13,720 nucleotides of DNA, from positions 433,481 to 447,200 of the forward strand of contig JAWQFM010000028.1 in the NCBI GenBank assembly GCA_033442325.1, read 5' to 3'. Shown here piece by piece: positions 1-13,720 of the stretch. Below the pieces are notes generated by a model. The model worked only from the letters and a program-made list of their open reading frames with translations, made no database searches and was not told the origin of the DNA. A program made the translations under genes and the position numbers. Within the stretch, counting starts at the first letter, position 1. Each line of letters begins with the position of its first letter. Source of the DNA: Salpingoeca rosetta. Lineage: Eukaryota; Protista; Choanoflagellata.

Positions 1-67
1 GGTCCACATGTGTTTTCACATTCTATCGCATACATCTTCAAGTCCGGGTATCTCTTAGGCCAGCATA

Positions 68-124
68 TCACATCGATTCAACATGCAGTCTACTCGTGGA
101 GGGACGCGACAGATCGCGGAGGTG
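68..124 (-). CDS. PCM1-like exon 25, tentative terminal exon: HLRDLSRPSTSRLHVESM*
   Basis: ctgctcctcccacaag acceptor, phase 0, TGA at 68-70. An alternative acceptor near 192, or continuation outside the window, is possible. Confidence 0.4.
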   Translation of the reverse strand, partial: HLRDLSRPSTSRLHVESM

Positions 125-522
125 CTTGTGGGAGGAGCAGACAGACAGATTTCCAGTTGATGAGAGAGAGAGGTAGAAACAGAGAGACATACTGATGGAG
201 AGACAGAGAGAGACAGAGAGAGAGAGACAGAGAGAGAGACAGAGAGAGAGAGAGGTTGTGTGTGTGTGTGTGTGTGTGAGTCACGTGTGCAGTCTCAATT
301 GCACGGGACAGTTTCAATTGCACGGGAGAGAAGGAACGTACAGTCAGGATGGTGGCAGCATCGGCGAGAAGATACAGGCAGCGCTGACGAGTGTAGTCGG
401 TGGTCATCGCCTTGAAAAGGCAATACAACGTGGAGTTGAACGAAGCGGACGTCAAGAAATCCGTGTATCCCGCGCGACACATGGCAGCGATGCGGTGATT
501 TTCACACACACGTTCACACACG

Positions 523-572
<50 letters not shown>

Positions 573-3296
573 CACACACACACACACAACACGCACACAC
601 ACACACACACACACAACACGCTCACGCACACGCACACACACATTCGCATGCATGTGGCTCACAGATAAGAGACGCAGGCTTCGCAGCAGGAATGGCGTGT
701 TTCCCTCCTGTGAGCGCCTGAGCTCCTCCATCGCCACGTCCACCTCATCCTAACGCACGTACACACACACACACAGACATGAATCTGCATGTGAGGTGTG
801 GATGGTTTGAACCAAATGACCACGGGAGAAAGGTGGAGGAAAGAGAAACGGGTGTTGCGATTTTAATGGACTACAGAACACACTTTACAGACGTTGGCGA
901 ATCAAATGGATCAAACAAACCACCAAGCAAAACAACGCCTCACAACACAAGCTACACATGCTGTCTCTCCCACCCTCACCACCACCACCACACTCACGCC
1001 AGCAACGAAAACACAGCAGAATAGGCACGAAAATAGCGCAACGAGAAGGTAGTGGCAACACCCGCGAAGCAACTCATAAAGGGAAGAAAACAGCAAGAAA
1101 CGGCACGCTGAGCGAAAAAGACAGCAACTGCCTGGTTGTCGCTAACTTCTCTGACAAACAACCCCCCCCCCTGCACACACACACACACACGTTACTCTGA
1201 ACAGCAGCAAGGGTGCAGCAACACCGCACACATGCACAGCAGCACGTAATGTGTGTGTGTATGTGTATGTGGCAAGTCAAGTGGTCAAAGTGTAGCCAGT
1301 GGTGTGCATTCAGCGGCGGCGACTCACGTTGGGCTTGGCGGCGGCCGTGCTGGGGACGGTGCCCGCATTGCTGGCTTCAAGGCCCCTCCCGCCAGCAGGG
1401 GTGTGCAGCCCCATTCGTGCCGGCGACATGGCAGGGTACCCAGACCACATGTTCGGCCACGCCTGCGCAGGCGCCTGGTACTGGTGTTGTTGCTGCTGCT
1501 GGTGTTGCTGGTGGTGGCGGCGGGCAGCACGGGAGACGGCCGTGTGCACCTCGCCTGACCGTCGATGATGATGGTGGCGGCGGCGGCGACGGTGTGATTG
1601 GTCGGGGCAGTGAGGGAGGAAGTGAGCAGGTGAGCAGGTGAGCAGAGGTTGAGAGGAGGCAAGGTCAGCAAGGAAACAAGCAACAAGTCCTTAACAGACG
1701 AACACAGACAGACAACCACATACACGAACACACACACACACACATGCACGAACACACACACACACACACATGCACGAACACACACACACACACACACACA
1801 TGCAGACAGCAACCTCACCGTCGCTGCGGACGTCGAGGTTGGCGAGGATAAGCGAGTAGCTCTGTGCAGCCTCAACAAATGCGCCAAAGGGCCCCTCCAT
1901 CAGCCGGCTGAAGAACAGGCTCAGAAACTCGTGCCGCTATCACAACGCAAAACACGTTGGCGTTGTGCGTTGTGGCGTGCGTGCGATGGTTTGAAGGTGA
2001 GCACAGGTTATGATGTACAGGATGAGCATTTCGAGAATGCAAGCACGAGATACCCACGAAGACGCACAGCTGGGTGCACGCGCGCGTGTGAACAAACCTC
2101 TGTTGGTTCGAGGATGCTGGCATAGGCAAGGGCCATCTGGAAGTTGTGCGCCTCCTCGCTGCGACGAATCTCACTGCGGAAACGAACAAACGGGGAATGT
2201 GACGTTGCAGAGAAGGCGGAGGAGGGGGGGGAGGAAGCATGGGGTGAAAAAAACAAAAACAAAAACAAATTAGCGTGCGCACAGCATCGTGTCAGCAATC
2301 AGGTTGGTCGATGCACAAAGCAAGACCAAGATCAAGGGCGAAAACAAAAGCAAGAATGAGGGCAAAAACGGCAGCGACAAGAATAAGAGCAACAGCAAAA
2401 GCAGAAGCAATAACAACAATCCCAACGACAATGATCACAAGAGAAACTGGCAACTGACATGTCTTCGCGGGTCTGTGCGTATGCTGCGTTGCTGACTTGG
2501 TCCATGCGGTGGTCCTCCTCCTCGTCCTCAACAACATCATCATCATCATCAACACCGCCGCCGCCACTGCCGTCCATACGCATGTCGTCGTTGTATTCTG
2601 CAATGCGCTCGTACACGTCGCTCAGCCCCTCGCGGCCATACATGCCACCCCGCTGCTGCAGCTCGCGCTGGTGCTGGCGGTACTCTGCCCCGGACACGGC
2701 CCGCGCCATGGCGTCACGTGCGGTGTTGTAGTCATCATCATCCTCTTCGTCATCCTGCCAGTACTCGGCATCAGCACTGCCACGTGTGCGCTGCTCACCA
2801 AGCTGCTGCCGGAGCAACAGCACGCGTTCGCGCATCTGCCGTGAATGGTGGTGGTGGTGGTTGATGGGGAAGACACAAGCAGAAAAAAAAAAAGAGTGGG
2901 TGAGAACAAGGAAGGTGCACATCAAGGGTGGCATGGGAAGGGCACACGTATTGCAGCAACAAAGCGTAAAGGGAAAATGACAATGCACGCGCGTGTGCAT
3001 GTGTGCACGTGCACGTGTGCGTGCGTGTGCGTGCGTGTGCAGTAGCCAACATACCCTGTTGAGGTTGTCCATGAGGCCGCGCTGGCGAATGACAAAATCG
3101 GCGTTCTGGTCGCCCTGCTCCATCGCAGCCTCAATTGTGTTCTGTGTACAGTGAAGCCCAGACGTACAGAGGCGCAAACAACACACAGCCATACACACGG
3201 TGAGCCCTGGATCACGCCTGAAGAGATCTTCAAAACTGAGAAGACAGGATATCACCAAAACCACCACGCAACAACGCCCACCAATCATGCATGCAC

Positions 3297-3332
<36 letters not shown>

Positions 3333-3347
3333 GCGCGCGCACGTGTA

Positions 3348-3426
<79 letters not shown>

Positions 3427-6051
3427 GAGTGTACCCTGTATTGCTCCTCGAGGCGGTGGAGTTCATCGAGCTCGTCCATCATAATGTCCTGCTCAAGCTG
3501 CCACTCTGCGGCGTCGGCCTGAGCATCGGCGCCATCGTCATCGCCCTCGCCCTCGCCGGCCATCGTCGTGCTCATCTCAGCTGCAACAGAGGGCTCCGTC
3601 GTCGCCCCAAGTGCAGGCGCGAGCGACACAGACCCTGCATGCCGTGGCGCCGGTGGCAGCAGATGGCAAGGCGAGGAACAGTGAGCAAGTAGGTGCACAC
3701 GTGACGCAACGACAACAGCGAGAGGAATAGGAGAAGAAAGCACCAAGAAGAAGGGGGAGAGGAAGCGGAAGAAGAGCAAGAACGACCAAGAGGAGGCAAG
3801 ACAAGAATCAGACCACCACCACCACCACCACCACCATCAGGAGTCAAGGCTAAGTGTGTCCCGCCTCACTGCACCTGATCGTGGGGAGATGCGCCCTGGA
3901 AGGAGGTAGCCTTTCTCGTGGTCCAGGTTGCGCAGCACCTCGTCAATCTCCGCCTGGCGCAGGCCAGACAGCTCGTCCTCCCGCGGCCCAATCTCCATCC
4001 CCATCAGCCCGCGCCGCTGCCGCCGCTGCCGCTGTTGCTCTTGTTGCTGCTGTTGGACATCCTCGTCATCGTCGTCGTCGGCGTCTTCCTCCTCCTCTGG
4101 CACTTCCTCAATGCCGTCTGGTGACCAGCACACGCGAAGGACGCAAAGAGGTGAGCAATCACCTCCAAGACGGGCCAACCAATCATTCCCGTCCTCTCGA
4201 AATAAGAAAATCCAGGCACGCACACAAACGCACATGCACGCACGCACCAAGCAACAACACAAACACGATCAAGTACAACACGCCCATGCACACACACACG
4301 TGTACGCTTACCGTGGTATGCGGCTGAGCGCTGCCTGCGTTGGCGAAGCTCCTGCGCCTCACGAATGACGCCGTGCCCCATCGCCCGCAGCTGCTCAACC
4401 CGCCCAAGCAGCGCCTGCAGACACAAGATTTCACCCCCCGGGGGGATACACGTAGTAGGGTGTTGTGGATGTGGATGTGGTGATGGTGATGGTGATGGTA
4501 GCCGTGAGAAGAGTTACATGGAAAAGATGTGCGGGAACAGCACGAATCACAGTGTTGCGAAATTCAGTTGAATGGAGGTACAATGTGTCTTTGTCTGACA
4601 CTGTGAGTGGCATGCACACAAGACCCATCCAAACGAAACACCGCATGCAACTACCACGGGTACGTACGTCAATTCTGCTGTTGATGCCGCTGCCGCCTGC
4701 AGAAGCGGACCCTTGCTCATCTTCTTCGTCTTCGTCGCGCTCATCCTCATCCTCGTCTTCGCCTGTCCCCTGCTCGGCTTGCCCAAACTGCAAACACACA
4801 TGCGCATTGTGCATCGGTACACGCGTCACCAGTATGGCAAGCAAAGGTAAAGACGCACACGCACATGCACACACACAGACACACACACACGCACATGCGG
4901 ACAGACAGACAGACAGACACACACACACACAGACAACACGGCCAGGTCGCAGAGCACGGTGGGCGTACCCGCAGGGCGCGAAGACCTTCCTTCTGAGCAC
5001 GCAGCATGGCCAGGAGTTGCTGTGGGCAGACGCACGTACACACAGGTCAGGCAGGTGACGTCAAGAGCAAGTGAGCATAAGGGATTAATGAGCTTGTTCA
5101 ACAACGCACGACCGGCACAGTACAATAAGAATACAGGAACACAGCGCGGCTGATGGCCTCAGATGTGCTCTTGTACGCGTGTGCATGCGCGTGCGTATGT
5201 GTGATGTCATGTACCTGGTGGCGCTGGAGTTCCTGAGAGAGCTGCTGTGCAAGCGCCTCACGTGACTCCTCCGTCACCTCATCTTCTTCCTCGTCCTCCT
5301 CCTCTTCTTCCTCGTCCCCGTCATCGACACCCTCTTGCTGTTGCTGTCGGCGTTGCCGTTGCTGCTGGGCGCCGTCTTCTTCGGCTTCGTCTTCACCGTC
5401 ACTTTCGGCTTCGTCCTGCTGCTGCTGGGCTGCGAGCATGCGCTGCCGCTTCTGCTCCAACAGCGCCGCCCGCTGCTCCTTCAGCGCCGCAAGCTGCGTC
5501 TGTACACATTCACACACACACACACAGGCGCATATGCACACGAACGTGGATGCAACACACCAGAGCACGAATGCATAGTGTGGCAGTGTGTAACATAGGC
5601 AAGGCGATTTGGGGGGGGGGGGGTGAGCGTGGAAGGCGCACATGTCGAGCGAGAAGGCCGAGCAAGGTTGTGCAGCGAAGAGACAAAACAAGTTGCACTG
5701 TCACACCAACACAGGACACGAGCAATATTTGAAGACGTACCCTTAGGTCTGCGAGCTGCTGCTGCTGCTCCTGCAGTTCGCGATACTGCTCCTGAGCAGC
5801 CTGTCATCGCACAGGTGGGCAGCCAGAGAAGCAAAAGTCAGGCAAGGGTCACACCTAAACACACCCAACACCCCCCAAAAAATTGTGCACATAACACAAC
5901 ACTCACGCACAGACATGTAGATGCACACTCTTGAATGCAGACGTGCGACGTTGTACGCACGCTGTTTTGTTGGAGTTGTTGCTCCTCCTGGATGAGACGG
6001 TCACGGAATGCTTGAAGCTCAGCGAGACGTGCACGCTTCGCCTCAAGCTCC

Positions 6052-6085
<34 letters not shown>

Positions 6086-7154
6086 GGACAGCCGCATGAG
6101 CAGTGTGTTGAGTGCATGAAAGGAGACAGTTGGTAGCAACTTGGACAGAAAGTCATTAACAGCATAAGAGCACAAACAGGGCAGGTGACCATGTTCAGCG
6201 ACATGCCATGAGTTCTTTGACCCACCGCCGGGCTTCGGCCACGCGGCGAGATTCAACGACATCATCAACCGTCTCCTCCTCATCACCATCATCGCCACCC
6301 TGCTGCTGTGGCTGGCCGCGGCGGTGCTGCTGTGCGCGGTTCAGGTTCAGGCTGTCGTTGGCGTTGCTTCGGACGGGCGCACCGCCACTCTGGGCACCTT
6401 CCTGGCCAGTCGCACCTTCGCCAGCGGCATCCTCGTCCTCCTCATCGCCACCGCTTCCCTGCTGTTGTTGCTGCTGCTGCTGTTCCTGCAGGGAGCGCAG
6501 CTGCAACAATTGCTGTCGCATGCGGCGCGTCTCGTGGAGCTCCTGCAGCAGGCGGTCCAGCTCAGCGCGCTGCGTCGACGACTGCGGCAGCGTCCGTGCA
6601 AGCTCGCTCGCCGCCACCACGCTCTCTGTTGCGGTAAGAACGGAGAGCGAGAGAGAGAGGGGGGGGGAGAGGGGAGGGTGTATGTGCATGCATGTGTGCG
6701 TGTGCGTGCGTGTGTGTGAGTGCGATGATATGAATCTCTTGTCCATACATTGATACCAGACACAAGCAGCGACTACAACAGCACAGAAAGAGCACCATCC
6801 CGAACAGCGCGCACGATCAGCAGCAGCAGCAGCACAGCACACGATCTCGGTTCACCTGACCTTCAATGTTGTCGAGGGACGGCTGAGTCGCAGCATCGCC
6901 ACCATCATGCTGCTGCTGCTGCTGCTCGTCGGTGTCATTGGTCTCATCATTCTCATCGTTCCCATCGTTTTCGTCATTGTTGTCGTTGTCGTCGTCGCCG
7001 GTGGGCATGCCGAGGGCGTGCTGGAGCATGGCCATCTGGTCCAGGTCAACCCCGAGCATCGGCAGCACCTGCGCCAGCTGCTCCCGGCCCAGGCCAAACA
7101 GCTGCTGCTGGTGCTGGTGCTGGTCGCCGTCGTTCTTGTCGCCCCCTTGACCGT

Positions 7155-7185
<31 letters not shown>

Positions 7186-7951
7186 AGCAGCATCCTCCTC
7201 GTCCACGTCTTCACGATCGCCTGTCATGCCCTGCAGACCAAGCAGTCCTTGCATGGCCATCAGCGCCTGCCCAACATCGTCGTCGCCACTCGCAGGCTCC
7301 CCCTGTATCAAGAAACATGCACGCATCATCAGGTGAAGGGGGGGGGGGTGTTGGGTGCGCGTGCGTGCACGTGTTGTGGCGGCGGTGATGGGGTGTGAGC
7401 AATATGCTGTGCGTGAGCACATCGGTGCAATTCGCGGAACATGTGTTGGTGTATGGAAAGCGAACAGGGCAAAAGCGCGAGCAAAGGGAAAAGCGAGAGC
7501 GAGAGCCAGTGGAGAGCGAGCAGGGTGCGCCAAACATACGCGGAGGGATTGCAGGAGCTGGAGTTGCTGCTGCAGCTCTTGTAGCTGCTGCTGCTTCTCG
7601 GCCAAGCGCTCGTACTGCCAGTGGTCATCAAAGTGAAGGGGGAAAAGACACAACAGGGCAGAAATGGCGTTAAGAATGCATGGAGGTTGCGACACGTACA
7701 CACGTGTGCGCTCAAGTTGCCTTCAGGGATGCACAAATTCCACAACATGTGCAACACGCATGCATGTGCTTCCACGTGCACACGAGTGTTCATACAAATG
7801 CAAGCATGGATAAACACACACACACACCAACTTCCTGCGGTAACTGACCTGCATCTTGACGTCCCTGACGGTTTCGCGGAGGTCATCGGGCAGCTGCTCC
7901 ACAACCGCGTCCGGCAGAAACGCAAGCTCCTGCACACGTAGCGCATCGTGG

Positions 7952-8016
<65 letters not shown>

Positions 8017-9501
8017 GGTATGCATTAAGGGGAGCTGAGAGGTGTTTCGGAATTTACATCAGGCAGGGTCCTTGACAAGTGAGAACACACACACACACAC
8101 ACACCTGCATGGAGAAGGCAGCGTCCTCGTCGTCATCATCCGCGTCCCCTTGTTCCTCGTCTGGTTGCTCCTCCTCCTCATCATCATCATCGCCATCAGC
8201 GTTGTTTTCATTCTCCTTGTTCGAATCATCATCTCCGATTTCTTCTTCTTCTTCTTCTTCTTCTTCTTGTTCTTCATCATCATCATCTTCTTCATCATCA
8301 CCATCCTCATCCTCATCCTCATCATCATCCTCGTGGTGCTCATCATCACTGTACTCGTCGTCCTCCTCCTGTTGTTCTTCCTCATCCTCTTGCTCCACCA
8401 GTGCATCTGCAGCGCCACCCTCCTGTGCGCTTGCCTGGTTTCCGAAGATCTCACCGCCACTCCCGCCCGCCAGCATTGCTTCAAGCTGTGCATGTGTGTG
8501 TGTGTGTGTGTGTGTGTGGGAAAGACCCATGTCAAGAGGCAATAACAAGTAACAAGTCAGGGAGCGAACATTGTGAGCGTGGTGGGCTGGCGCTGTTGTG
8601 TGCATGCGCACTTGTGTCGTTGTCTACGTGCTTGTGGATGTGTGGATGTGTGTGTATGACTGGTAGGCAGCTGCCAACGCCATGTGGCAACGTGGTTGTA
8701 GTGTTTACGCATCTGTAGCCCTTGTGCAGCGTTGAAGCAGCATGACAAAGCATCATGCAACACACCTGACGGGAGAGCTGTTGCAGCTCCTCACGCTGAG
8801 CTGCCAAGTCCTCCACCTGCCCCAAGAACAAAACAGTCGTCGTCGACACCAGCATAACGTGAATAATGGCAGCTGCATGAGCAATGCTGGACACACACGC
8901 GCACATTCGGGCACACACACACGCACACAACGCGAAACGAGCACAAGCGCGATTTCGCTCACGTCGTAGCCGGAGGCATGTGTGGTGGCAGCATCGAAGC
9001 TTCGGTTCAGTCTACCCAGAGTCGACACAGGATGCAGCAACGTGCACGTTATGTTTGTGCGCGAGTTGTATGTGTTGTGTGTTGATGTGTGTGCGTGAGT
9101 TGTGTGTTGTGTGTTGATGTGTGTGTGTTGTGCCTTAGATGTGGACAAGATGTGAGGTGTGAGTCAGTGAGAGTGCGTGTCAGATGAAGGCAGCGTGCCA
9201 TTCAAGCAAGCGCACCTGGAGTTGCCGCTTGAGGGGGATGAGGCTTGTCGCAGCCGGCTGAGGCGCGAGCTCGGAAGCCTCGGTGGCTCACTCGCCGGCA
9301 CTCGCCCTGCGGGTGGTGGCAGTGTTCGTGGTCACATAGCGGTGTACGACGTGAGTAGGACGACAACGAAACGGGCTGTCATTGTGCACACAACAAGCTG
9401 CATTGTGGATACAACAAGGGACCCACTCGAAAGAAACGACGGCACAGAAACATGCGAACACACATGCGAACACATGCAAACACACACACACACAGACACG
9501 C

Positions 9502-9560
<59 letters not shown>

Positions 9561-9586
9561 CAGACAATCGACCTACCACCGTCCAT
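68..9586 (-). CDS. PCM1: Multi-exon PCM1-like (pericentriolar material 1 / centriolar-satellite scaffold-like) coiled-coil, acidic low-complexity protein, ~1,276 aa. Exons in transcript order: 9577-9586, 9216-9306, 8963-9011, 8766-8816, 8105-8485, 7849-7929, 7540-7614, 6861-7302, 6226-6625, 5961-6051, 5741-5800, 5215-5499, 4969-5019, 4668-4787, 4312-4414, 3875-4117, 3435-3634, 3055-3141, 2459-2835, 2098-2173, 1819-1936, 1328-1554, 663-749, 342-410, 68-124 (last exon tentative)
   Basis: All 24 introns have GT..AG ends, and the phases chain into one stop-free 3,831-nt frame starting MDGGRVPASEPPRLPSS. The spliced C-terminal motif TDYTRQRCLYLLAD resembles vertebrate PCM1 TDYLRQRALYALQD (recalled from memory, not searched). 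Gene structure is better supported than family identity. Confidence 0.7.
198..278. repeat. Compound (GA)n/(GT)n intronic microsatellite
   Basis: Directly visible. Confidence 0.9.
291..328. repeat. 19-bp tandem duplication, AGTCTCAATTGCACGGGAC / AGTTTCAATTGCACGGGAG
   Basis: Two adjacent copies, 17/19 identical, intronic. Confidence 0.85.
342..410 (-). CDS. PCM1-like exon 24: AMTTDYTRQRCLYLLADAATILT
   Basis: ccttttcaag acceptor, gtacgt donor, 69 nt, phase 0-0; carries the PCM1-like motif. Confidence 0.8.
503..642. repeat. Interrupted (CA)n microsatellite, intronic
   Basis: Directly visible. Confidence 0.9.
663..749 (-). CDS. PCM1-like exon 23: DEVDVAMEELRRSQEGNTPFLLRSLRLLS
   Basis: gcgttag acceptor, gtgagc donor, 87 nt, phase 0-0. 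Confidence 0.8.
1328..1554 (-). CDS. PCM1-like exon 22: Q/H/P/A-rich segment (GEVHTAVSRAARRHHQQHQQQQQHQYQAPAQAWPNMW...AAKPN)
   Basis: ggtcag acceptor (phase 1), gtgagt donor (phase 0). Confidence 0.75.
1819..1936 (-). CDS. PCM1-like exon 21: RHEFLSLFFSRLMEGPFGAFVEAAQSYSLILANLDVRSD
   Basis: gtgatag acceptor (phase 0), gtgagg donor (phase 1). Confidence 0.75.
2098..2173 (-). CDS. PCM1-like exon 20: EIRRSEEAHNFQMALAYASILEPTE
   Basis: tttccgcag acceptor (phase 2), gtttgt donor. Confidence 0.75.
2459..2835 (-). CDS. PCM1-like exon 19: MRERVLLLRQQLGEQ...AYAQTREDI
   Basis: cggcag acceptor, gtcagt donor (phase 2). Confidence 0.8.
3055..3141 (-). CDS. PCM1-like exon 18: NTIEAAMEQGDQNADFVIRQRGLMDNLNR
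   Basis: acacag acceptor, gtatgt donor, phase 0-0. Confidence 0.8.
3348..3427. repeat. (TCTG)n tetranucleotide microsatellite, ~20 units, intronic
   Basis: Directly visible. Confidence 0.95.
3435..3634 (-). CDS. PCM1-like exon 17: ...AAEWQLEQDIMMDELDELHRLEEQYR
   Basis: catgcag acceptor (phase 1; an in-phase alternative lies at ~3581), gtacac donor. Confidence 0.7.
3875..4117 (-). CDS. PCM1-like exon 16: DGIEEVPEEEED...LRQAEIDEVLRNLDHEKGYLLPGRISPRS
   Basis: tcaccag acceptor, gtgcag donor, phase 1-1. Confidence 0.75.
4312..4414 (-). CDS. PCM1-like exon 15: ALLGRVEQLRAMGHGVIREAQELRQRRQRSAAYH
   Basis: tctgcag acceptor, gtaagc donor. Confidence 0.8.
4668..4787 (-). CDS. PCM1-like exon 14: FGQAEQGTGEDEDEDERDEDEEDEQGSASAGGSGINSRID
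   Basis: tttgcag acceptor, gtacgt donor, phase 0-0. Confidence 0.8.
4969..5019 (-). CDS. PCM1-like exon 13: QLLAMLRAQKEGLRALR
   Basis: cccacag acceptor, gtacgc donor, phase 0-0. Confidence 0.8.
5215..5499 (-). CDS. PCM1-like exon 12: TQLAALKEQRAALLEQKRQRM...ALAQQLSQELQRHQ
   Basis: gtacag acceptor, gtacat donor, phase 0-0. Confidence 0.8.
5741..5800 (-). CDS. PCM1-like exon 11: AAQEQYRELQEQQQQLADLR
   Basis: gatgacag acceptor, gtacgt donor, phase 0-0. This frame is not in the ORF track. Confidence 0.8.
5961..6051 (-). CDS. PCM1-like exon 10: ELEAKRARLAELQAFRDRLIQEEQQLQQNS
   Basis: gtgcag acceptor (phase 2), gtgcgt donor. Confidence 0.8.
6226..6625 (-). CDS. PCM1-like exon 9: SVVAASELARTLPQSSTQRAELDRLLQELHETRRMRQQLLQLRSLQE...VAEARR
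   Basis: gcaacag acceptor (phase 1), gtgggt donor (phase 2). Confidence 0.8.
6861..7302 (-). CDS. PCM1-like exon 8: GEPASGDDDVGQALMAMQGLLG...QPSLDNIE
   Basis: gatacag acceptor, gtcagg donor (phase 1). Confidence 0.8.
7540..7614 (-). CDS. PCM1-like exon 7: YERLAEKQQQLQELQQQLQLLQSLR
   Basis: tggcag acceptor, gtatgt donor, phase 0-0. Confidence 0.8.
7849..7929 (-). CDS. PCM1-like exon 6: ELAFLPDAVVEQLPDDLRETVRDVKMQ
   Basis: gtgcag acceptor, gtcagt donor, phase 0-0. Confidence 0.8.
7953..8013. repeat. (TG)n microsatellite, intronic
   Basis: Directly visible. Confidence 0.95.
8105..8485 (-). CDS. PCM1-like exon 5: LEAMLAGG followed by a ~90-residue D/E tract
   Basis: gcacag acceptor, gtgtgt donor, phase 0-0. 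Confidence 0.8.
8766..8816 (-). CDS. PCM1-like exon 4: VEDLAAQREELQQLSRQ
   Basis: gggcag acceptor, gtgtgt donor, phase 0-0. Confidence 0.8.
8963..9011 (-). CDS. PCM1-like exon 3: LNRSFDAATTHASGYD
   Basis: gggtag acceptor (phase 2), gtgagc donor. Confidence 0.7.
9216..9306 (-). CDS. PCM1-like exon 2: RVPASEPPRLPSSRLSRLRQASSPSSGNS
   Basis: cccgcag acceptor (phase 1), gtgcgc donor (phase 2). Confidence 0.7.
9577..9586 (-). CDS. PCM1-like coding exon 1: ATG GAC GGT G
   Basis: gacATGG start context; gtaggt donor in phase 1, matching exon 2. Confidence 0.6.
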
Positions 9587-10230
9587 GTCGGAGGCGCGTG
9601 TCCAGGCTTCACTCAACAGCGACAGCGCTGAGAAGATAATGGTTGCGGGAAGATGCTTGTTGTTGTTGTTGTTGTTGTTCAATGCTTGATGGCTGTTGTA
9701 GTTATCTCTGTTTTGTGTTTTAAAACAGCATGAGAGTGTCGATCGTGTGAGATTTGTAGCTACACACCGCACCACAAAACATCGCAACATAAACACATCA
9801 CAACCACCACAACGGAGATCATACACCATCATCCATGTGCGTCAATTCGACCATCACCACCACCATATCCACGATCACAGCCAGTGCACCACCATCGACG
9901 CGCTCACCAACAGCAGATGAAGCAAACAAGCAAGGCACAAAACGGCCGCGGAAAGTTAGTGGGAAACATCGCAGTCGCTCACACCTGTCAACTTTGACAG
10001 GCACCCCAACAACAACAACAAAGAGAGAGAGGGAAGAATTTTTTTTTCTTTGCCCAATCCAATCATCATCAAACACTCGATTCCACACCCCTCTCAGCTG
10101 CCTCAGCTGCCTGCATCAGCTGCCTTGCGTCGTCCAGCCGCTCGTCATTTCCCCCCTCCTCCTCCTCGTCTTCCTGCGCCGTATCGCTGTCGCCCTCCCC
10201 TACTCAACCCTGCAACGCGCAACCTGAGTC
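9587..10230. promoter_or_regulatory. Divergent intergenic region: candidate bidirectional promoter plus both 5' UTRs
   Basis: 644 bp between the oppositely oriented ATGs at 9586 (-) and 10231 (+). Transcription starts cannot be seen from the sequence. Confidence 0.6.
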
Positions 10231-10295
10231 ATGAGCGTGGTTAAAGAAGGCTGGCTGTTGAAGCGCGGCGAATACATCTCCACTTGGAGGCCCAG
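10231..10295 (+). CDS. AKT: Akt exon 1: [22 protein letters not shown]
   Basis: Start of the PH domain; gtttgt donor, phase 2. Confidence 0.95.
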
Positions 10296-13200
10296 GTTTG
10301 TTGTTTTGGTTTTGTTTGTTTTGGTTTGGCTTGTGCGTAGTGATTGTTTGCTGTGCTGTGCTGTTGTGTGCTGTTGTGTGCTGCTTGTGCTGCTTTGTGT
10401 GCGACTCTGTGCATATCTTGGATCGTGATGGTTGGTGACGTGTGTTGTGTGTTGGCGACACCCGCATTCCGTGTTGGGTTGTGGCGAACCAATGGGGACC
10501 ACTGACTTGTTTTACACGATGCTGTTGTTGTCGTGTGCGGACAGGTACTTTGTGTTGCGCAGCGACGGCAAGTTCCTCGGGTTTAAGCAAAAGCCTGCCA
10601 GTGCCAGTGATCCAGCTGTCAACAAGTTTGACGTGAGTGTGTGTGTGTGTGTGAACGTGTACTTGTGAGTGTCAAGGGTGCCGTGTATCGATGTGTGCGT
10701 GTGCGTGTGCGTGTGCGTGTATGTGTGTGTGCGTGCTTGTATGTGCAGGCTCTCTGTCGGAAGGCCAGTCGCTGCTGGCACCGTTCTATCATCACTGCTC
10801 TCGCTTATCGCACATTGTGTTCACGGTTGGCATTGCAGATCAGGGATTGCAAGATCTCTGTCGAGGATGACAAGGGCAAGAGCGGGAAGTTCGGCTTCTC
10901 CATCCGGTGCGTTCATGTGATTGGTGTTGTGAGTTGGTGTGTTTCTGAGTGGCTGTGTTTGCGGTTTTGTGTGTGTGCGTGTGTGTATGTGTGTATGTGT
11001 ATGTGTGTGTGTATGTGTTATGTGTTATGTGTTATGTGTTATGTGTTATGTGTATGTGTATGTGTGTATGTGTATGTGTATGTGTGTGTGTATGTGTGTG
11101 TGTGTCTGTGTGCGTGAATGTGTGTATGTGTGTGTGTCTCTCTCTCTGTGTGGTTATGGCTTGTCGCCCAAGCTTGTACACGACCTCCATCACCCTCCAC
11201 CTCTTCTGGTCACTCCATCCATAGTCATGTGCTCACATGACGAACTGACGCATGCTGCCAAACCAACAGCTTTGTTCAGATGACGCGCGTGATTGAGCGT
11301 TCCTTCCATACAGAGTCTGCCATGGAGCGCCAGGAGTGGGTTGACGCCATCACGGGACTCAAGCACTCCGTATGTACTCCACCGCATTGCTCTCTCTCGT
11401 ATGTGTGTGTGTATGTCTTTGTTCGATGCGGAAACAGGCTGGTTTGCTTGCCACCTGGCATACGTGAGCGCTTGCTTGTGCTCCGTACCATCACCCTCCC
11501 CAGTTTATTCTATCCCATCCAACTGACACGCTTCTACCATCGTCCTCGCCTTGTTCCACCACCACCACCACCACCACCACCACCACCACCACCACCACCA
11601 CCACCACCACTCCTCTTTCCATGACGGACAGCTCGAGGGAGCCGGTGACTCGCGCGGCTCGCGGTCATCACACGACACCCGCGCCATGTCCTTCATTGGC
11701 GGCCGCCCAGAGCCCGCAGACATCTCCATGGACAGCTTCGAAATGCTCAAGGTTCGCCCCAGCGTGTGTATGTATGTGTGTGTGTGTGTGTGTGTAGGAG
11801 AGGGGGGTCATTGGATCATGGTAGCAGCGCCACATGTGATTACCTGTTCAGTCAGCCTGTGTCACACACACACACAGGCAGACACACACATACACATACA
11901 CACGTTCTCTTACCTCACAAACGCACCCACTTACACTCATACACACCCACTTACACCCCATACACACACACGCACGCACGGCGCGTGTGTAGGTGCTTGG
12001 CAAGGGCAGCTTTGGCAAGGTGATGCTTGCCAAGCTCAAGTCATCGGGTGCCGTTTACGCGATCAAAGTTCTCAAGAAGAGCATGGTGCGTTTGTTGAGA
12101 CGCACACGCACACACGCGCACACATGTGTAACAGACAAACCTTTGCTGCTCCTGCTGTGACTATTGTTTCCACGTGACCGTCATGCGTCGCTCTTGGTGG
12201 TTTATATGCATGTTCTGCTTGTTTTGTCCTAACACACACACACACACGCGCGCGCGCGCACACACATGCCGTCAATCACACCTCACGCGCACATGTCCCT
12301 GTTTTGTGTGGCAGATTCTGGAGAAGAACGAGCTGGCGCACACGTTTACGGAGAACTCCGTGCTGGCCAAGTGCTCGCATCCGTTCCTGACGTCGCTGCA
12401 CTACTCGTTCCAGACACCAGACCTCCTCTGCTTCGTCATGGAATACGTCAACGGCGGCGAGGTGCACACGTGCTCACACGCTCGACGGTCATGTGGCGTG
12501 CTGCCGTGATGGCGTGTGTGTGTCGTGTGTGTGTGTGTGTGTGCGCGCGCGCGCGTGTGTGTGTGTCGTGTGCGTGTGTCGTGTGTGTGTCGTGTGCGTG
12601 TGTCCATGTGTGTGCGTGTACACGTGCGTGTGTATGCATGGGCTTCAACTTCCATACTGTTGTTGTCCCTGCCTGCTCTTCCCCTTCGTGAGCTCACCAC
12701 CACTGCACCCACCCTCCCCTCTTGTAGCTGTTCTTCCACCTGCGCAAGGAGAAGAAGTTCAGCGAGGACCGCACGCGCATCTACATTGCGGAGATTCTGC
12801 TTGCGCTGACATACCTGCACGACCAAGGCATCATCTACCGCGACCTCAAGCTCGAGAACCTGCTGCTCGACGCCGAGGGACACATCAAGGTACACCAGCA
12901 CGTGCGATGCGGTTGGCGTGGTGGCGTGGCAGTTGGTGTTGTGGTGCCGTGGACGGGGAAAGTTATTGGCGCTCGCAGGGCAATTTTATGCAACCTTAAT
13001 TTGAGTGCTGTGTGTCTCCTTTGACAACGACAGGCGGTGCTTCCATTTGTCTCATCTCAGAACACTTCCTTTTAGGCGCTCACCTTCTCACTCACCCATT
13101 ACACGCTTGATGCCACGCCATGGTTACGCCCTTCAGATTACGGACTTTGGTCTGTGTAAGGAGGAGATCACGTACGGCTCCACGACGCGCACCTTCTGCG

Positions 13201-13372
13201 GCACCCCAGAATACCTCGTGCGTTGGCCACCTGCTCGTGACGGTGGTGGTGTTGATGGCGTTGGGAGCAGGGCTGGAGTAGAGGGCTTTGGGGGGGGATT
13301 TGTGGTGCATGGAGAGTGGTACTCATTTCCGTGTGTGCAATGACGGCTTTTGATACTCACTCTTCCTCTTCA

Positions 13373-13437
<65 letters not shown>

Positions 13438-13491
13438 TGCATAGGCGCCTGAAGTGATTCTCGACTCAGACTACGGCCTTCCTGTCGACTG
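10231..13491 (+). CDS. AKT: RAC serine/threonine protein kinase Akt/PKB (PH domain + AGC kinase domain), 3'-truncated by the window end. Exons: 10231-10295, 10545-10632, 10839-10906, 11270-11369, 11632-11751, 11993-12085, 12315-12461, 12728-12889, 13137-13217, 13445-13491
   Basis: The spliced product has the Akt PH signature [21 protein letters not shown]...VIERSFH...ERQEWVDAI. Kinase motifs are [70 protein letters not shown] and DYG..VDW. All introns are GT-AG with consistent phases. Confidence 0.97.
10545..10632 (+). CDS. AKT: Akt exon 2: [29 protein letters not shown]
   Basis: gacag acceptor, gtgagt donor. Confidence 0.93.
10839..10906 (+). CDS. AKT: Akt exon 3: [23 protein letters not shown]
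   Basis: ttgcag acceptor, gtgcgt donor. Confidence 0.9.
10968..11140. repeat. Degenerate (GT)/(GTAT)/(TATGTGT) simple repeat in Akt intron 3
   Basis: Directly visible. Confidence 0.85.
11270..11369 (+). CDS. AKT: Akt exon 4: [33 protein letters not shown]
   Basis: caacag acceptor, gtatgt donor; PH C-terminal helix. Confidence 0.93.
11556..11610. repeat. (CCA)18 trinucleotide repeat in Akt intron 4
   Basis: Directly visible, just upstream of the acceptor at 11631. Confidence 0.95.
11632..11751 (+). CDS. AKT: Akt exon 5: linker [40 protein letters not shown]
   Basis: ggacag acceptor, gttcgc donor. Confidence 0.9.
11993..12085 (+). CDS. AKT: Akt exon 6: [31 protein letters not shown]
   Basis: Gly-rich loop and catalytic Lys; gtgtag acceptor, gtgcgt donor. 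Confidence 0.95.
12315..12461 (+). CDS. AKT: Akt exon 7: [17 protein letters not shown]...[10 protein letters not shown]
   Basis: tggcag acceptor, gtgcac donor. Confidence 0.95.
12728..12889 (+). CDS. AKT: Akt exon 8: [17 protein letters not shown]...[18 protein letters not shown]
   Basis: Catalytic loop; ttgtag acceptor, gtacac donor. Confidence 0.95.
13137..13217 (+). CDS. AKT: Akt exon 9: [27 protein letters not shown] (activation-loop Thr codon 13191-13193)
   Basis: DFG motif and T-loop; cttcag acceptor, gtgcgt donor. Confidence 0.95.
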
Positions 13492-13500
13492 GTCAGTGAG

Positions 13501-13590
<90 letters not shown>
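13376..13590. repeat. Two long (GT)n tracts (~13376-13434 and ~13503-13590) flanking Akt exon 10
   Basis: Directly visible. Confidence 0.95.
13445..13491 (+). CDS. AKT: Akt exon 10: [16 protein letters not shown]
   Basis: gcatag acceptor, gtcagt donor (phase 2). Further exons lie outside the window. Confidence 0.93.
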
Positions 13591-13593
<3 letters not shown>

Positions 13594-13720
13594 ATTCTCA
13601 TTTACGCACCCACCCATACACATTCGCACTCGCACTCACTCATTCACGCTTCTTCACACACACACACACACACACACATTCACCCCCACTCTCTCTCACA
13701 CTCACACTCACGCACTCACA

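What the first reader, a model, noticed from the sequence alone, without database searches (positions are those of the whole stretch)
342..749. Splice-hidden PCM1 signature: a candidate centriolar-satellite scaffold in a probable unicellular relative of animals
Seen: joining exons 663-749 and 342-410 (both phase 0) gives EELRRSQEGNTPFLLRSLRLLSAMTTDYTRQRCLYLLADAATIL. Knowledge, from memory: the vertebrate PCM1 C-terminal region contains LISQNESRPHFLIELFHELQLLNTDYLRQRALYALQDIV. SQ, FL, and TDYxRQRxLYxLxD align with near-identical spacing. PCM1 scaffolds centriolar satellites, which are studied almost only in animal cells. Inference: this organism, probably a choanoflagellate, may have a satellite-like trafficking system for its basal body and flagellum. 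The motif is split by an intron and embedded in low-complexity sequence, so the gene is likely annotated as hypothetical. I cannot verify whether earlier comparative surveys already noted this homolog.
Basis: partly seen in the sequence, partly recalled or inferred. Interest (0 to 1): 0.8.

Follow-up and report, generated by a model that had tools for sequence, protein, structure and literature searches.

The report
Known choanoflagellate PCM1, truncated gene model
The spliced motif is real and marks the start of the conserved C-terminal domain of the Salpingoeca rosetta PCM1 gene, which was already published as a PCM1 orthologue; the only new point is that the database gene model stops before the motif because an assembly gap cuts the gene in two.

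Summary
Minus-strand exons 749-663 and 410-342 are both phase 0 with AG/GT borders.

**Evidence for PCM1.**
- Joined, the two exons hit one Pfam family only, PCM1_C. The alignment is ungapped (profile 28-60, E 0.014, 14.6 bits) but below the curated cut-off of 27.4.
- The gene is PTSG_08833 (XP_004990220, 'hypothetical protein').

**Gene model.** The annotated 1211-aa model ends by reading through a donor at 1327. Both motif exons are therefore unannotated. The window stops at an assembly gap. The next called gene (797 aa) lies beyond that gap.

A complete 1719-aa transcript ORF of Microstomoeca roanoka is colinear with PTSG_08833, the two exons and the next gene. Its alignment spans the 663/410 junction without a gap. 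This points to one gene of at least 2067 codons.

**Novelty.** PCM1 in choanoflagellates was reported in 2010 for Monosiga brevicollis. PTSG_08833 itself is listed as the S. rosetta PCM1 orthologue in Pachinger et al. 2025. The finding is already known apart from the gene-model correction.

**Not done.** No metazoan PCM1 could be fetched for a reciprocal test. Satellite function in this organism remains untested.

The parts
1328..9586 (-). Annotated part of the gene: exons 1-22 of PTSG_08833, from the ATG at 9586. Exon coordinates: 9586-9577, 9306-9216, 9011-8963, 8816-8766, 8485-8105, 7929-7849, 7614-7540, 7302-6861, 6625-6226, 6051-5961, 5800-5741, 5499-5215, 5019-4969, 4787-4668, 4414-4312, 4117-3875, 3634-3435, 3141-3055, 2835-2459, 2173-2098, 1936-1819, 1554-1328.
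   Evidence: All introns are GT-AG. The translation is identical to P0001 residues 1-1206. P0001 is XP_004990220, S. rosetta PTSG_08833.
1819..2173 (-). Exons 20-21 (2173-2098 and 1936-1819). They encode the block HNFQMALAYASILEPTERHEFLSLFFSRLMEGPFGAFVEAAQSYSLILANLD, the best conserved block upstream of the motif.
   Evidence: 70% identical over 53 aa to M. roanoka P0002 827-879 (61% over the longer 66-aa alignment), and 58% identical to S. infusionum P0003 688-762. No Pfam hit for either exon scanned alone.
1310..1327 (-). Tail of the annotated model (VSRRR plus stop). It reads through the GTGAGT donor of exon 22 into the intron. This is most likely an annotation artefact.
   Evidence: P0001 diverges from the spliced model exactly here and ends VSRRR.
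663..749 (-). Unannotated exon 23, phase 0 (DEVDVAMEELRRSQEGNTPFLLRSLRLLS).
   Evidence: Its last 13 residues (residues 17-29 of the joined peptide, NTPFLLRSLRLLS) are part of the PCM1_C match when joined to exon 24. Its last 10 residues (FLLRSLRLLS) aligned to P0002 from residue 923.
411..662 (-). 252-nt intron between exons 23 and 24, rich in (GT)n.
342..410 (-). Unannotated exon 24, phase 0 (AMTTDYTRQRCLYLLADAATILT). It carries the TDYxRQRxLYxL signature. The 3' border is not verified.
   Evidence: Alone it hits PCM1_C 42-60 at E 0.073. Joined it reaches E 0.014. It aligns to P0002 933-954.
1..341 (-). Undetermined stretch up to the assembly gap. It may be intron, or may hold part of a further exon. 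The next recognisable exon (TPSEADTEHLLRM...) lies beyond the gap at L001 21009 and needs phase 1, so at least one exon is missing.
   Evidence: Ns begin immediately after window position 1 (L001 19587-20752). A tblastn of P0002 940-1075 found nothing significant here.

Best explanation
The two small exons are real coding exons of the Salpingoeca rosetta PCM1 orthologue. They encode the first recognisable stretch of its conserved C-terminal domain (Pfam PCM1_C, profile positions 28-60).

The public gene model PTSG_08833 holds only the N-terminal 1206 residues. These are acidic, Q-rich and form long helices. The model ends artificially inside an intron, because the scaffold has a 1.2-kb gap just past the window.

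The rest of the domain and the C-terminus are annotated as a separate 797-aa gene beyond the gap. The true product has at least 2067 residues, the size of human PCM1 (2024 aa).

Inferred from what PCM1 does in vertebrates and flies, and not shown here: the helical N-terminal and central part self-associates into cytoplasmic granules that gather centrosomal and ciliary proteins (or their translation) for the basal body and flagellum. The C-terminal domain would modulate that assembly.
For: **Shown here.**
- The 24-exon GT-AG model is open for 1258 codons and identical to P0001 for 1206 residues.
- The gene is PTSG_08833 on GL832979.1.
- N runs flank the window on both sides.
- The downstream gene model is reproduced at 797 aa. 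Its frame stays open upstream to an acceptor at L001 21009.
- One complete M. roanoka transcript ORF (P0002, 1719 aa) is colinear with everything. S. rosetta N-part 191-256, 724-746, 815-962, 1075-1127 and 1226-1257 match P0002 138-203, 603-625, 649-790, 827-879 and 923-954. Downstream-gene residues 1-16, 286-435 and 725-756 match P0002 1058-1073, 1192-1341 and 1641-1671.
- The alignment across the 663/410 junction has no gap.
- PCM1_C is the only Pfam family hit by the joined peptide, at E 0.014, ungapped.
- AlphaFold2 gives helices of 40, 118 and 42 residues in P0001 380-700. A crude scan finds heptad-like segments.

**From the literature.**
- XP_004990220 is listed as the S. rosetta PCM1 orthologue, found by reciprocal BLAST/HMM (PMC12094185).
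- PCM1 was reported in M. brevicollis.
Against: - The PCM1_C score (14.6 bits) is below the gathering score of 27.4.
- The full-length M. roanoka relative and its pieces get no PCM1_C hit at E up to 10. The same is true of the downstream S. rosetta exons scanned singly.
- No metazoan PCM1 sequence could be obtained. No reciprocal or profile-profile test was run here.
- There is no direct transcript evidence for the junctions.
- The sequence between exon 24 and the next gene lies in a gap, so the continuity of the reading frame cannot be shown.
Confidence: 0.8

Rival explanations
1. Chance motif resemblance. The gene is a lineage-specific acidic coiled-coil protein of choanoflagellates. The TDYxRQRxLYxL stretch looks like PCM1_C by accident.
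For: - The hit is 14.6 bits, E 0.014, on 33 residues only, below the curated cut-off.
- M. roanoka P0002 shows no PCM1_C hit at all.
Against: - The hit is to the one family named in advance, out of 24,736 (per-model P of about 6e-7).
- It is ungapped and grows when the exons are joined.
- It lies where the domain should start, after about 1240 residues of helical or acidic sequence in a protein of at least 2067 residues.
- The same gene was called the PCM1 orthologue independently, from its annotated part, which does not contain the motif.
Confidence: 0.1
2. The annotated stop is real. PTSG_08833 ends at about 1310. The two exons belong to the downstream gene or to an alternative isoform, so S. 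rosetta makes the PCM1 halves as two separate proteins.
For: - The public annotation has two genes.
- The S. infusionum ORF P0003 (762 aa, labelled complete) also ends shortly after the ...ANL block.
Against: - The annotated end is a read-through of a consensus GTGAGT donor, only 5 codons long.
- Exon 23 follows in phase.
- The sister species M. roanoka has one uninterrupted ORF covering both halves in order.
- The split coincides with an assembly gap.
- P0003 diverges at the position of the exon 21 donor, as a retained intron would (inference).
Confidence: 0.07
3. It is a true PCM1 orthologue but does not act as a pericentriolar 'satellite' transport scaffold. [quoted passage not shown]
For: Pachinger et al. 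report that concentration near centrosomes and directed movement are not conserved features, and that satellites are sites of translation.
Against: Nothing in the sequence distinguishes the two modes. No localisation data exist for choanoflagellates in the searched library.
Confidence: 0.4

Closest known systems
Vertebrate PCM1 (human Q15154, 2024 aa), scaffold of centriolar satellites; Pfam PCM1_C PF15717
   Same: - Similar size: at least 2067 aa against 2024 aa.
- A long helical or coiled-coil and disordered N-terminal two thirds.
- A conserved domain starting about 60% along the chain.
- The FL...TDYxRQRxLYxL signature aligns without a gap to profile positions 28-60.
   Different: - Much more acidic and Q-rich (D+E about 25%, K about 1%).
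- About 100 residues of low-complexity insert between the FGAFVEAAQ block and the motif.
- The rest of PCM1_C is not detectable by Pfam on single exons or in the M. roanoka relative.
- No canonical LIR motif was found in the S. rosetta C-terminal part.
- Function is untested.
Drosophila Combover (CMB), the divergent PCM1 orthologue (PMC12094185)
   Same: Homology to human PCM1 is very low and largely confined to the C-terminal region. Detecting it needs intermediates or profiles.
   Different: Combover has been studied experimentally (foci, ciliary phenotypes, translation link). Nothing has been done for the choanoflagellate protein.
Monosiga brevicollis MONBRDRAFT_33155 (EDQ87896), the choanoflagellate PCM1 reported by Hodges et al. 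2010 and Pachinger et al. 2025
   Same: It is the published choanoflagellate PCM1 orthologue.
   Different: It could not be fetched or compared here. None of the three word-index searches returned it.
Microstomoeca roanoka EP00043_P013068 (P0002, 1719 aa) and Salpingoeca infusionum EP00049_P006118 (P0003, 762 aa)
   Same: Both are direct orthologues, with 35% identity overall and 55-70% in the conserved blocks. P0002 is colinear with both halves of the S. rosetta gene.
   Different: - P0002 is shorter, with fewer low-complexity inserts. Its motif (SDYKRKRCLYLL) is further from the Pfam consensus and gets no hit.
- P0003 is truncated before the motif.

Membership tests
PCM1 (Pfam PCM1_C, PF15717) | S. 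rosetta sequence matches the PCM1_C profile | tested here: inconclusive
   The joined exons give PCM1_C as the only family: E 0.014, 14.6 bits, profile 28-60 of 628, against a gathering score of 27.4. Exon 24 alone gives E 0.073. Only 33 profile positions lie inside the window, and the remainder is beyond an assembly gap. Downstream exons scanned singly give no hit.
PCM1 (Pfam PCM1_C, PF15717) | The full-length orthologue from a related species matches the PCM1_C profile | tested here: not met
   M. roanoka P0002, whole and in six pieces, gets no PCM1_C hit at E up to 10. Divergent accepted members such as Drosophila Combover also needed intermediates. This lowers the claim but does not exclude membership.
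PCM1 orthologue group | Reciprocal best hit with metazoan PCM1 | not tested
   No metazoan PCM1 could be fetched. All three homologous-protein searches returned choanoflagellate proteins only. The PDB holds none. The result is reported as positive for XP_004990220 in PMC12094185 Table S1.
PCM1 orthologue group | Architecture: about 2000 aa, multiple coiled coils and disordered regions in the N-terminal two thirds, conserved domain in the C-terminal third | tested here: met
   1258 aa up to exon 24 plus 809 aa beyond the gap gives at least 2067 aa. AlphaFold2 predicts helices of 40, 118 and 42 residues with pLDDT 73-89 in P0001 380-700. Heptad-like segments were found. The motif lies at residues 1242-1254.
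PCM1 orthologue group | Occurs in organisms with centrioles and cilia | tested here: met
   The organism is identified as Salpingoeca rosetta. It is a flagellated choanoflagellate (established knowledge). The phyletic pattern is described in PMC12094185.
Centriolar satellite scaffold (function) | Forms cytoplasmic granules that hold centrosomal and ciliary proteins; its loss disperses them and impairs ciliogenesis | not testable with these tools
   This needs tagging and knock-out in S. rosetta. No paper in the library holds both 'centriolar satellite' and 'Salpingoeca rosetta'.
Centriolar satellite scaffold (function) | C-terminal LIR motif binding GABARAP (human EDFVKV, PMC11839937) | tested here: inconclusive
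   A regex for acidic-[WFY]xx[LIV] finds EDFEHL in M. roanoka (P0002 1457) but none in the S. rosetta C-terminal part. A similar DDDFDHDM there lacks the hydrophobic fourth position.

The most novel reading that the evidence does not exclude
The full-length S. rosetta PCM1 (PTSG_08833 plus two unannotated exons, the gap and the next gene) builds satellite-like granules that serve the basal body and flagellum. If so, the satellite scaffold and its function predate animals. S. rosetta would then be a genetically tractable unicellular system to decide between the transport model and the translation-hub model.
Probability: 0.4. Interest if true: 0.5.

Novelty: already known. Interest (0 to 1): 0.2.

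Why it matters
The presence of PCM1 in choanoflagellates, and in this very gene, is already published, so the evolutionary point is not new.

The practical value is a curation point. The accession used in the literature for S. rosetta PCM1 (XP_004990220) is only the N-terminal 1206 residues plus five spurious ones. It lacks the whole conserved C-terminal domain. That domain begins in two unannotated exons and continues in a separately annotated gene beyond an assembly gap.

Anyone who aligns, tags, knocks out or expresses 'S. rosetta PCM1' from the current model would work with a truncated protein. N-terminal fragments of vertebrate PCM1 are known, from my own knowledge of the field, to aggregate abnormally.

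Tried and rejected
- **RNA-seq check of the 663/410 junction.** The only later use of those letters was a local string-equality check of the window against L001 in the sandbox.
- **Fetching metazoan PCM1 or the M. brevicollis protein for a reciprocal or profile test.** Three word-index searches returned only P0001, P0002 and P0003 (one search was a parameter slip). The one exhaustive search, with exon 2835-2459, returned only P0001.
- **Pfam on single exons of both halves and on M. roanoka pieces.** There was no PCM1_C hit except for exon 24. Weak hits to PBP1_TM, DUF3450, FTA4 and Med3 are compositional or coiled-coil noise.
- **ESM Atlas by features.** No usable hit.
- **PDB by sequence.** One spurious designed PPR protein.
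- **AlphaFold2 of the conserved C-terminal block (P0002 1185-1345).** All-helical, pLDDT 68, pTM 0.32. The Atlas fold search on it gave unrelated helical proteins with TM of at most 0.52 and no PCM1_C cluster. This is uninformative.
- **A further exon in window 1-341 or in L001 20753-21008.** A tblastn of P0002 940-1075 found only the TPSEADTEHLLRM exon beyond the gap. A faint SR.AIE resemblance arises if exon 24 is read through its donor, but it is not significant.
- **Rfam and tRNA scans of 538-13720.** Nothing.
- **Hodges et al. 2010.** The paper (PMC2858018) is not held in the library, so it is cited through two reviews.
Full report
**1. The observation**

Read on the minus strand, window 749-663 gives DEVDVAMEELRRSQEGNTPFLLRSLRLLS, and 410-342 gives AMTTDYTRQRCLYLLADAATILT. 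The first piece follows ...ttAG and precedes GTGAGC. The second follows ...caAG and precedes GTACGT.

Both pieces sit in phase 0 inside a larger gene that I reconstructed from the sequence. It has 24 exons from an ATG at 9586 down to 342. All introns are GT-AG, and the frame is open for 1258 codons.

**2. Is the PCM1 resemblance more than chance?**

- Exon 410-342 alone (23 aa) hits Pfam PCM1_C and nothing else: profile positions 42-60 of 628, E 0.073.
- The 52-aa peptide made by joining the two exons again hits PCM1_C only. Residues 17-49 align on profile 28-60, 33 on 33 without a gap, at E 0.014 and 14.6 bits.
- The score is well below the family's gathering score (27.4), as expected for 33 of 628 positions, so by Pfam's own standard it is not a hit.
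- I scanned about 27 peptides in all, so a weak hit to some family would mean little. This one is to the single family named in advance, with a per-model probability of about 6e-7.

**3. What the gene is**

The exhaustive protein search with exon 2835-2459 found one protein at 100% identity, P0001 of 1211 aa. It is EGD77744.1 / XP_004990220.1, 'hypothetical protein PTSG_08833' of Salpingoeca rosetta, on scaffold GL832979.1.

My spliced model equals P0001 for residues 1-1206. P0001 then ends VSRRR, which is the read-through of the GTGAGT donor after exon 1554-1328. Exons 749-663 and 410-342 are therefore not part of any annotated protein.

**4. Why the model is truncated**

The window is the reverse complement of locus L001 5867-19586. 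It is bounded by runs of N on both sides. A gap of 1166 N starts one base past window position 1.

Beyond the gap the annotation calls a separate gene of 797 aa with no Pfam hit on record. I reproduced its nine exons. Its frame stays open upstream of the annotated ATG to an acceptor at L001 21009 (TPSEADTEHLLRMVGQ...).

**5. One gene, not two**

A word-index search with P0001 returned two relatives from choanoflagellate transcriptomes:
- P0002, 1719 aa, a complete ORF of Microstomoeca roanoka.
- P0003, 762 aa, of Salpingoeca infusionum.

BLASTP in the sandbox shows that P0002 is colinear with everything:

| S. rosetta piece | Residues | P0002 residues | Note |
|---|---|---|---|
| N part | 191-256 | 138-203 | |
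| N part | 724-746 | 603-625 | |
| N part | 815-962 | 649-790 | |
| N part | 1075-1127 | 827-879 | |
| N part | 1226-1257 | 923-954 | the two unannotated exons; 59% identity; no gap at the junction |
| Downstream gene | 1-16 | 1058-1073 | |
| Downstream gene | 286-435 | 1192-1341 | 67% identity |
| Downstream gene | 725-756 | 1641-1671 | |

About 100 residues of P0002 (955-1057, a poorly conserved linker) have no counterpart. They must lie in the gap or in window 1-341.

Phase also requires at least one missing exon: exon 24 ends in phase 0, and the next recognisable exon needs phase 1. The true S. rosetta product therefore has at least 1258 + 809 = 2067 residues.

**6. Anatomy**

- The N-terminal 1250 residues are extremely acidic and Q-rich (D+E about 26%, Q 12%, K under 1%).
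- AlphaFold2 on P0001 380-700 predicts helices of 40, 118 and 42 residues (pLDDT 73-89), separated by disordered acidic linkers.
- A crude heptad scan marks five segments.
- The conserved blocks are three. The first is the exon 20-21 block (...HEFLSLFFSRLMEGPFGAFVEAAQSYSLILANLD). The second is the TDY motif. The third is a helical block of about 150 residues beyond the gap (DSLLQEFSDDLFVHAVILQQ ... LLYDEMVFNKVIEQVDRSYQKEMAEL).
- Pfam sees only the TDY motif. The other blocks get no PCM1_C hit, whether as single S. rosetta exons or as contiguous M. roanoka sequence. This is evidence against, and I report it as such.
- A model of the 150-residue block was of low confidence, and its fold search was uninformative.

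**7. What is already known**

Two reviews report that Hodges et al. 2010 found PCM1 homologues in Monosiga brevicollis and several invertebrates (PMC11839937, PMC7185976).

Pachinger et al. 2025 (J Cell Biol, PMC12094185; preprint 2024) state that reciprocal BLAST and HMM searches reveal PCM1 orthologues across opisthokonts, including choanoflagellates and ciliated fungi. Their Table S1 lists 'uncharacterized protein PTSG_08833, XP_004990220' as the S. rosetta PCM1 orthologue and EDQ87896 for M. brevicollis.

That call was made on the annotated protein, which does not contain the motif. No paper in the searched library holds both 'centriolar satellite' and 'Salpingoeca rosetta', and none holds the locus tag in its main text.

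**8. How it most likely works**

This section is inference from family knowledge. In vertebrates PCM1 is the scaffold required for centriolar satellites and self-associates through coiled-coil regions (PMC11839937). [quoted passage not shown]

By homology and architecture, the S. rosetta protein probably multimerises through its long helices into cytoplasmic granules that support basal-body and flagellum biogenesis. Whether these granules cluster at the basal body or move on microtubules is open. The biochemical role of the TDYxRQRxLYxL stretch is unknown to me.

**9. Verdict**

What remains is a gene-model correction: the published accession is a truncated N-terminal half, the signature exons are unannotated, and the C-terminal half is filed as a separate gene because of an assembly gap.

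An earlier first-stage note of this scan on the neighbouring piece (s1-443243) reads the downstream gene as a divergent PCM1 C-terminal domain. That agrees with the colinearity shown here, although Pfam did not confirm it on single exons.

- One 52-letter peptide, the joined exons, was typed for the Pfam scan, because no reference exists for a spliced product.

Noticed in passing
window 10231-13499, + strand: This is an Akt/PKB-like AGC kinase gene. Its PH domain starts [24 protein letters not shown] run of about 20 His lies in the linker. The kinase motifs are [20 protein letters not shown] and ITDFGLCKE. The annotated product has only 317 aa (PH + Pkinase), and the gene runs toward the other assembly gap at the window's end, so this model is probably truncated too.
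   Followed up: partly
window 1 and 13720 (L001 19587-20752 and L001 1-5866): The window is a contig piece bounded by runs of N on both sides. The 1166-N gap next to position 1 is what splits the PCM1 gene.
   Followed up: yes
P0003 (Salpingoeca infusionum EP00049_P006118), residues about 750-762: This ORF, labelled 'complete', ends 10 residues after the ...ANLSLETEG block. That is the position of the S. rosetta exon 21 donor, and the divergent tail starts with V (GTN). It looks like a retained intron in the assembled transcript rather than a real short isoform.
   Followed up: no
window 279-341, minus strand: Just after the GTACGT donor of exon 24 lies an 18-19-nt tandem duplication (cccgtgcaattgaaactgt / cccgtgcaattgagactg). 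Read through the donor, the frame stays open and gives ...LSRAIETAH, faintly like M. roanoka ...QSRIAIENMP. An alternative donor GTGACT at 284 is possible, so the 3' border of the exon is not settled.
   Followed up: partly
P0002 1455-1462; L001 about 24440-24470: An acidic F-containing stretch (M. roanoka KEDFEHLD, S. rosetta EDDDFDHDM) recalls the LIR motif EDFVKV of human PCM1. Only the M. roanoka version fits the canonical [WFY]xx[LIV] pattern.
   Followed up: partly
window introns, e.g. 3300-3425, 4850-4960, 7960-8030, 13390-13600: Nearly every intron and intergenic stretch carries long (GT)n/(CA)n or (CAGA)n microsatellites. One of them (501-537) tripped the reads tool's filter.
   Followed up: no
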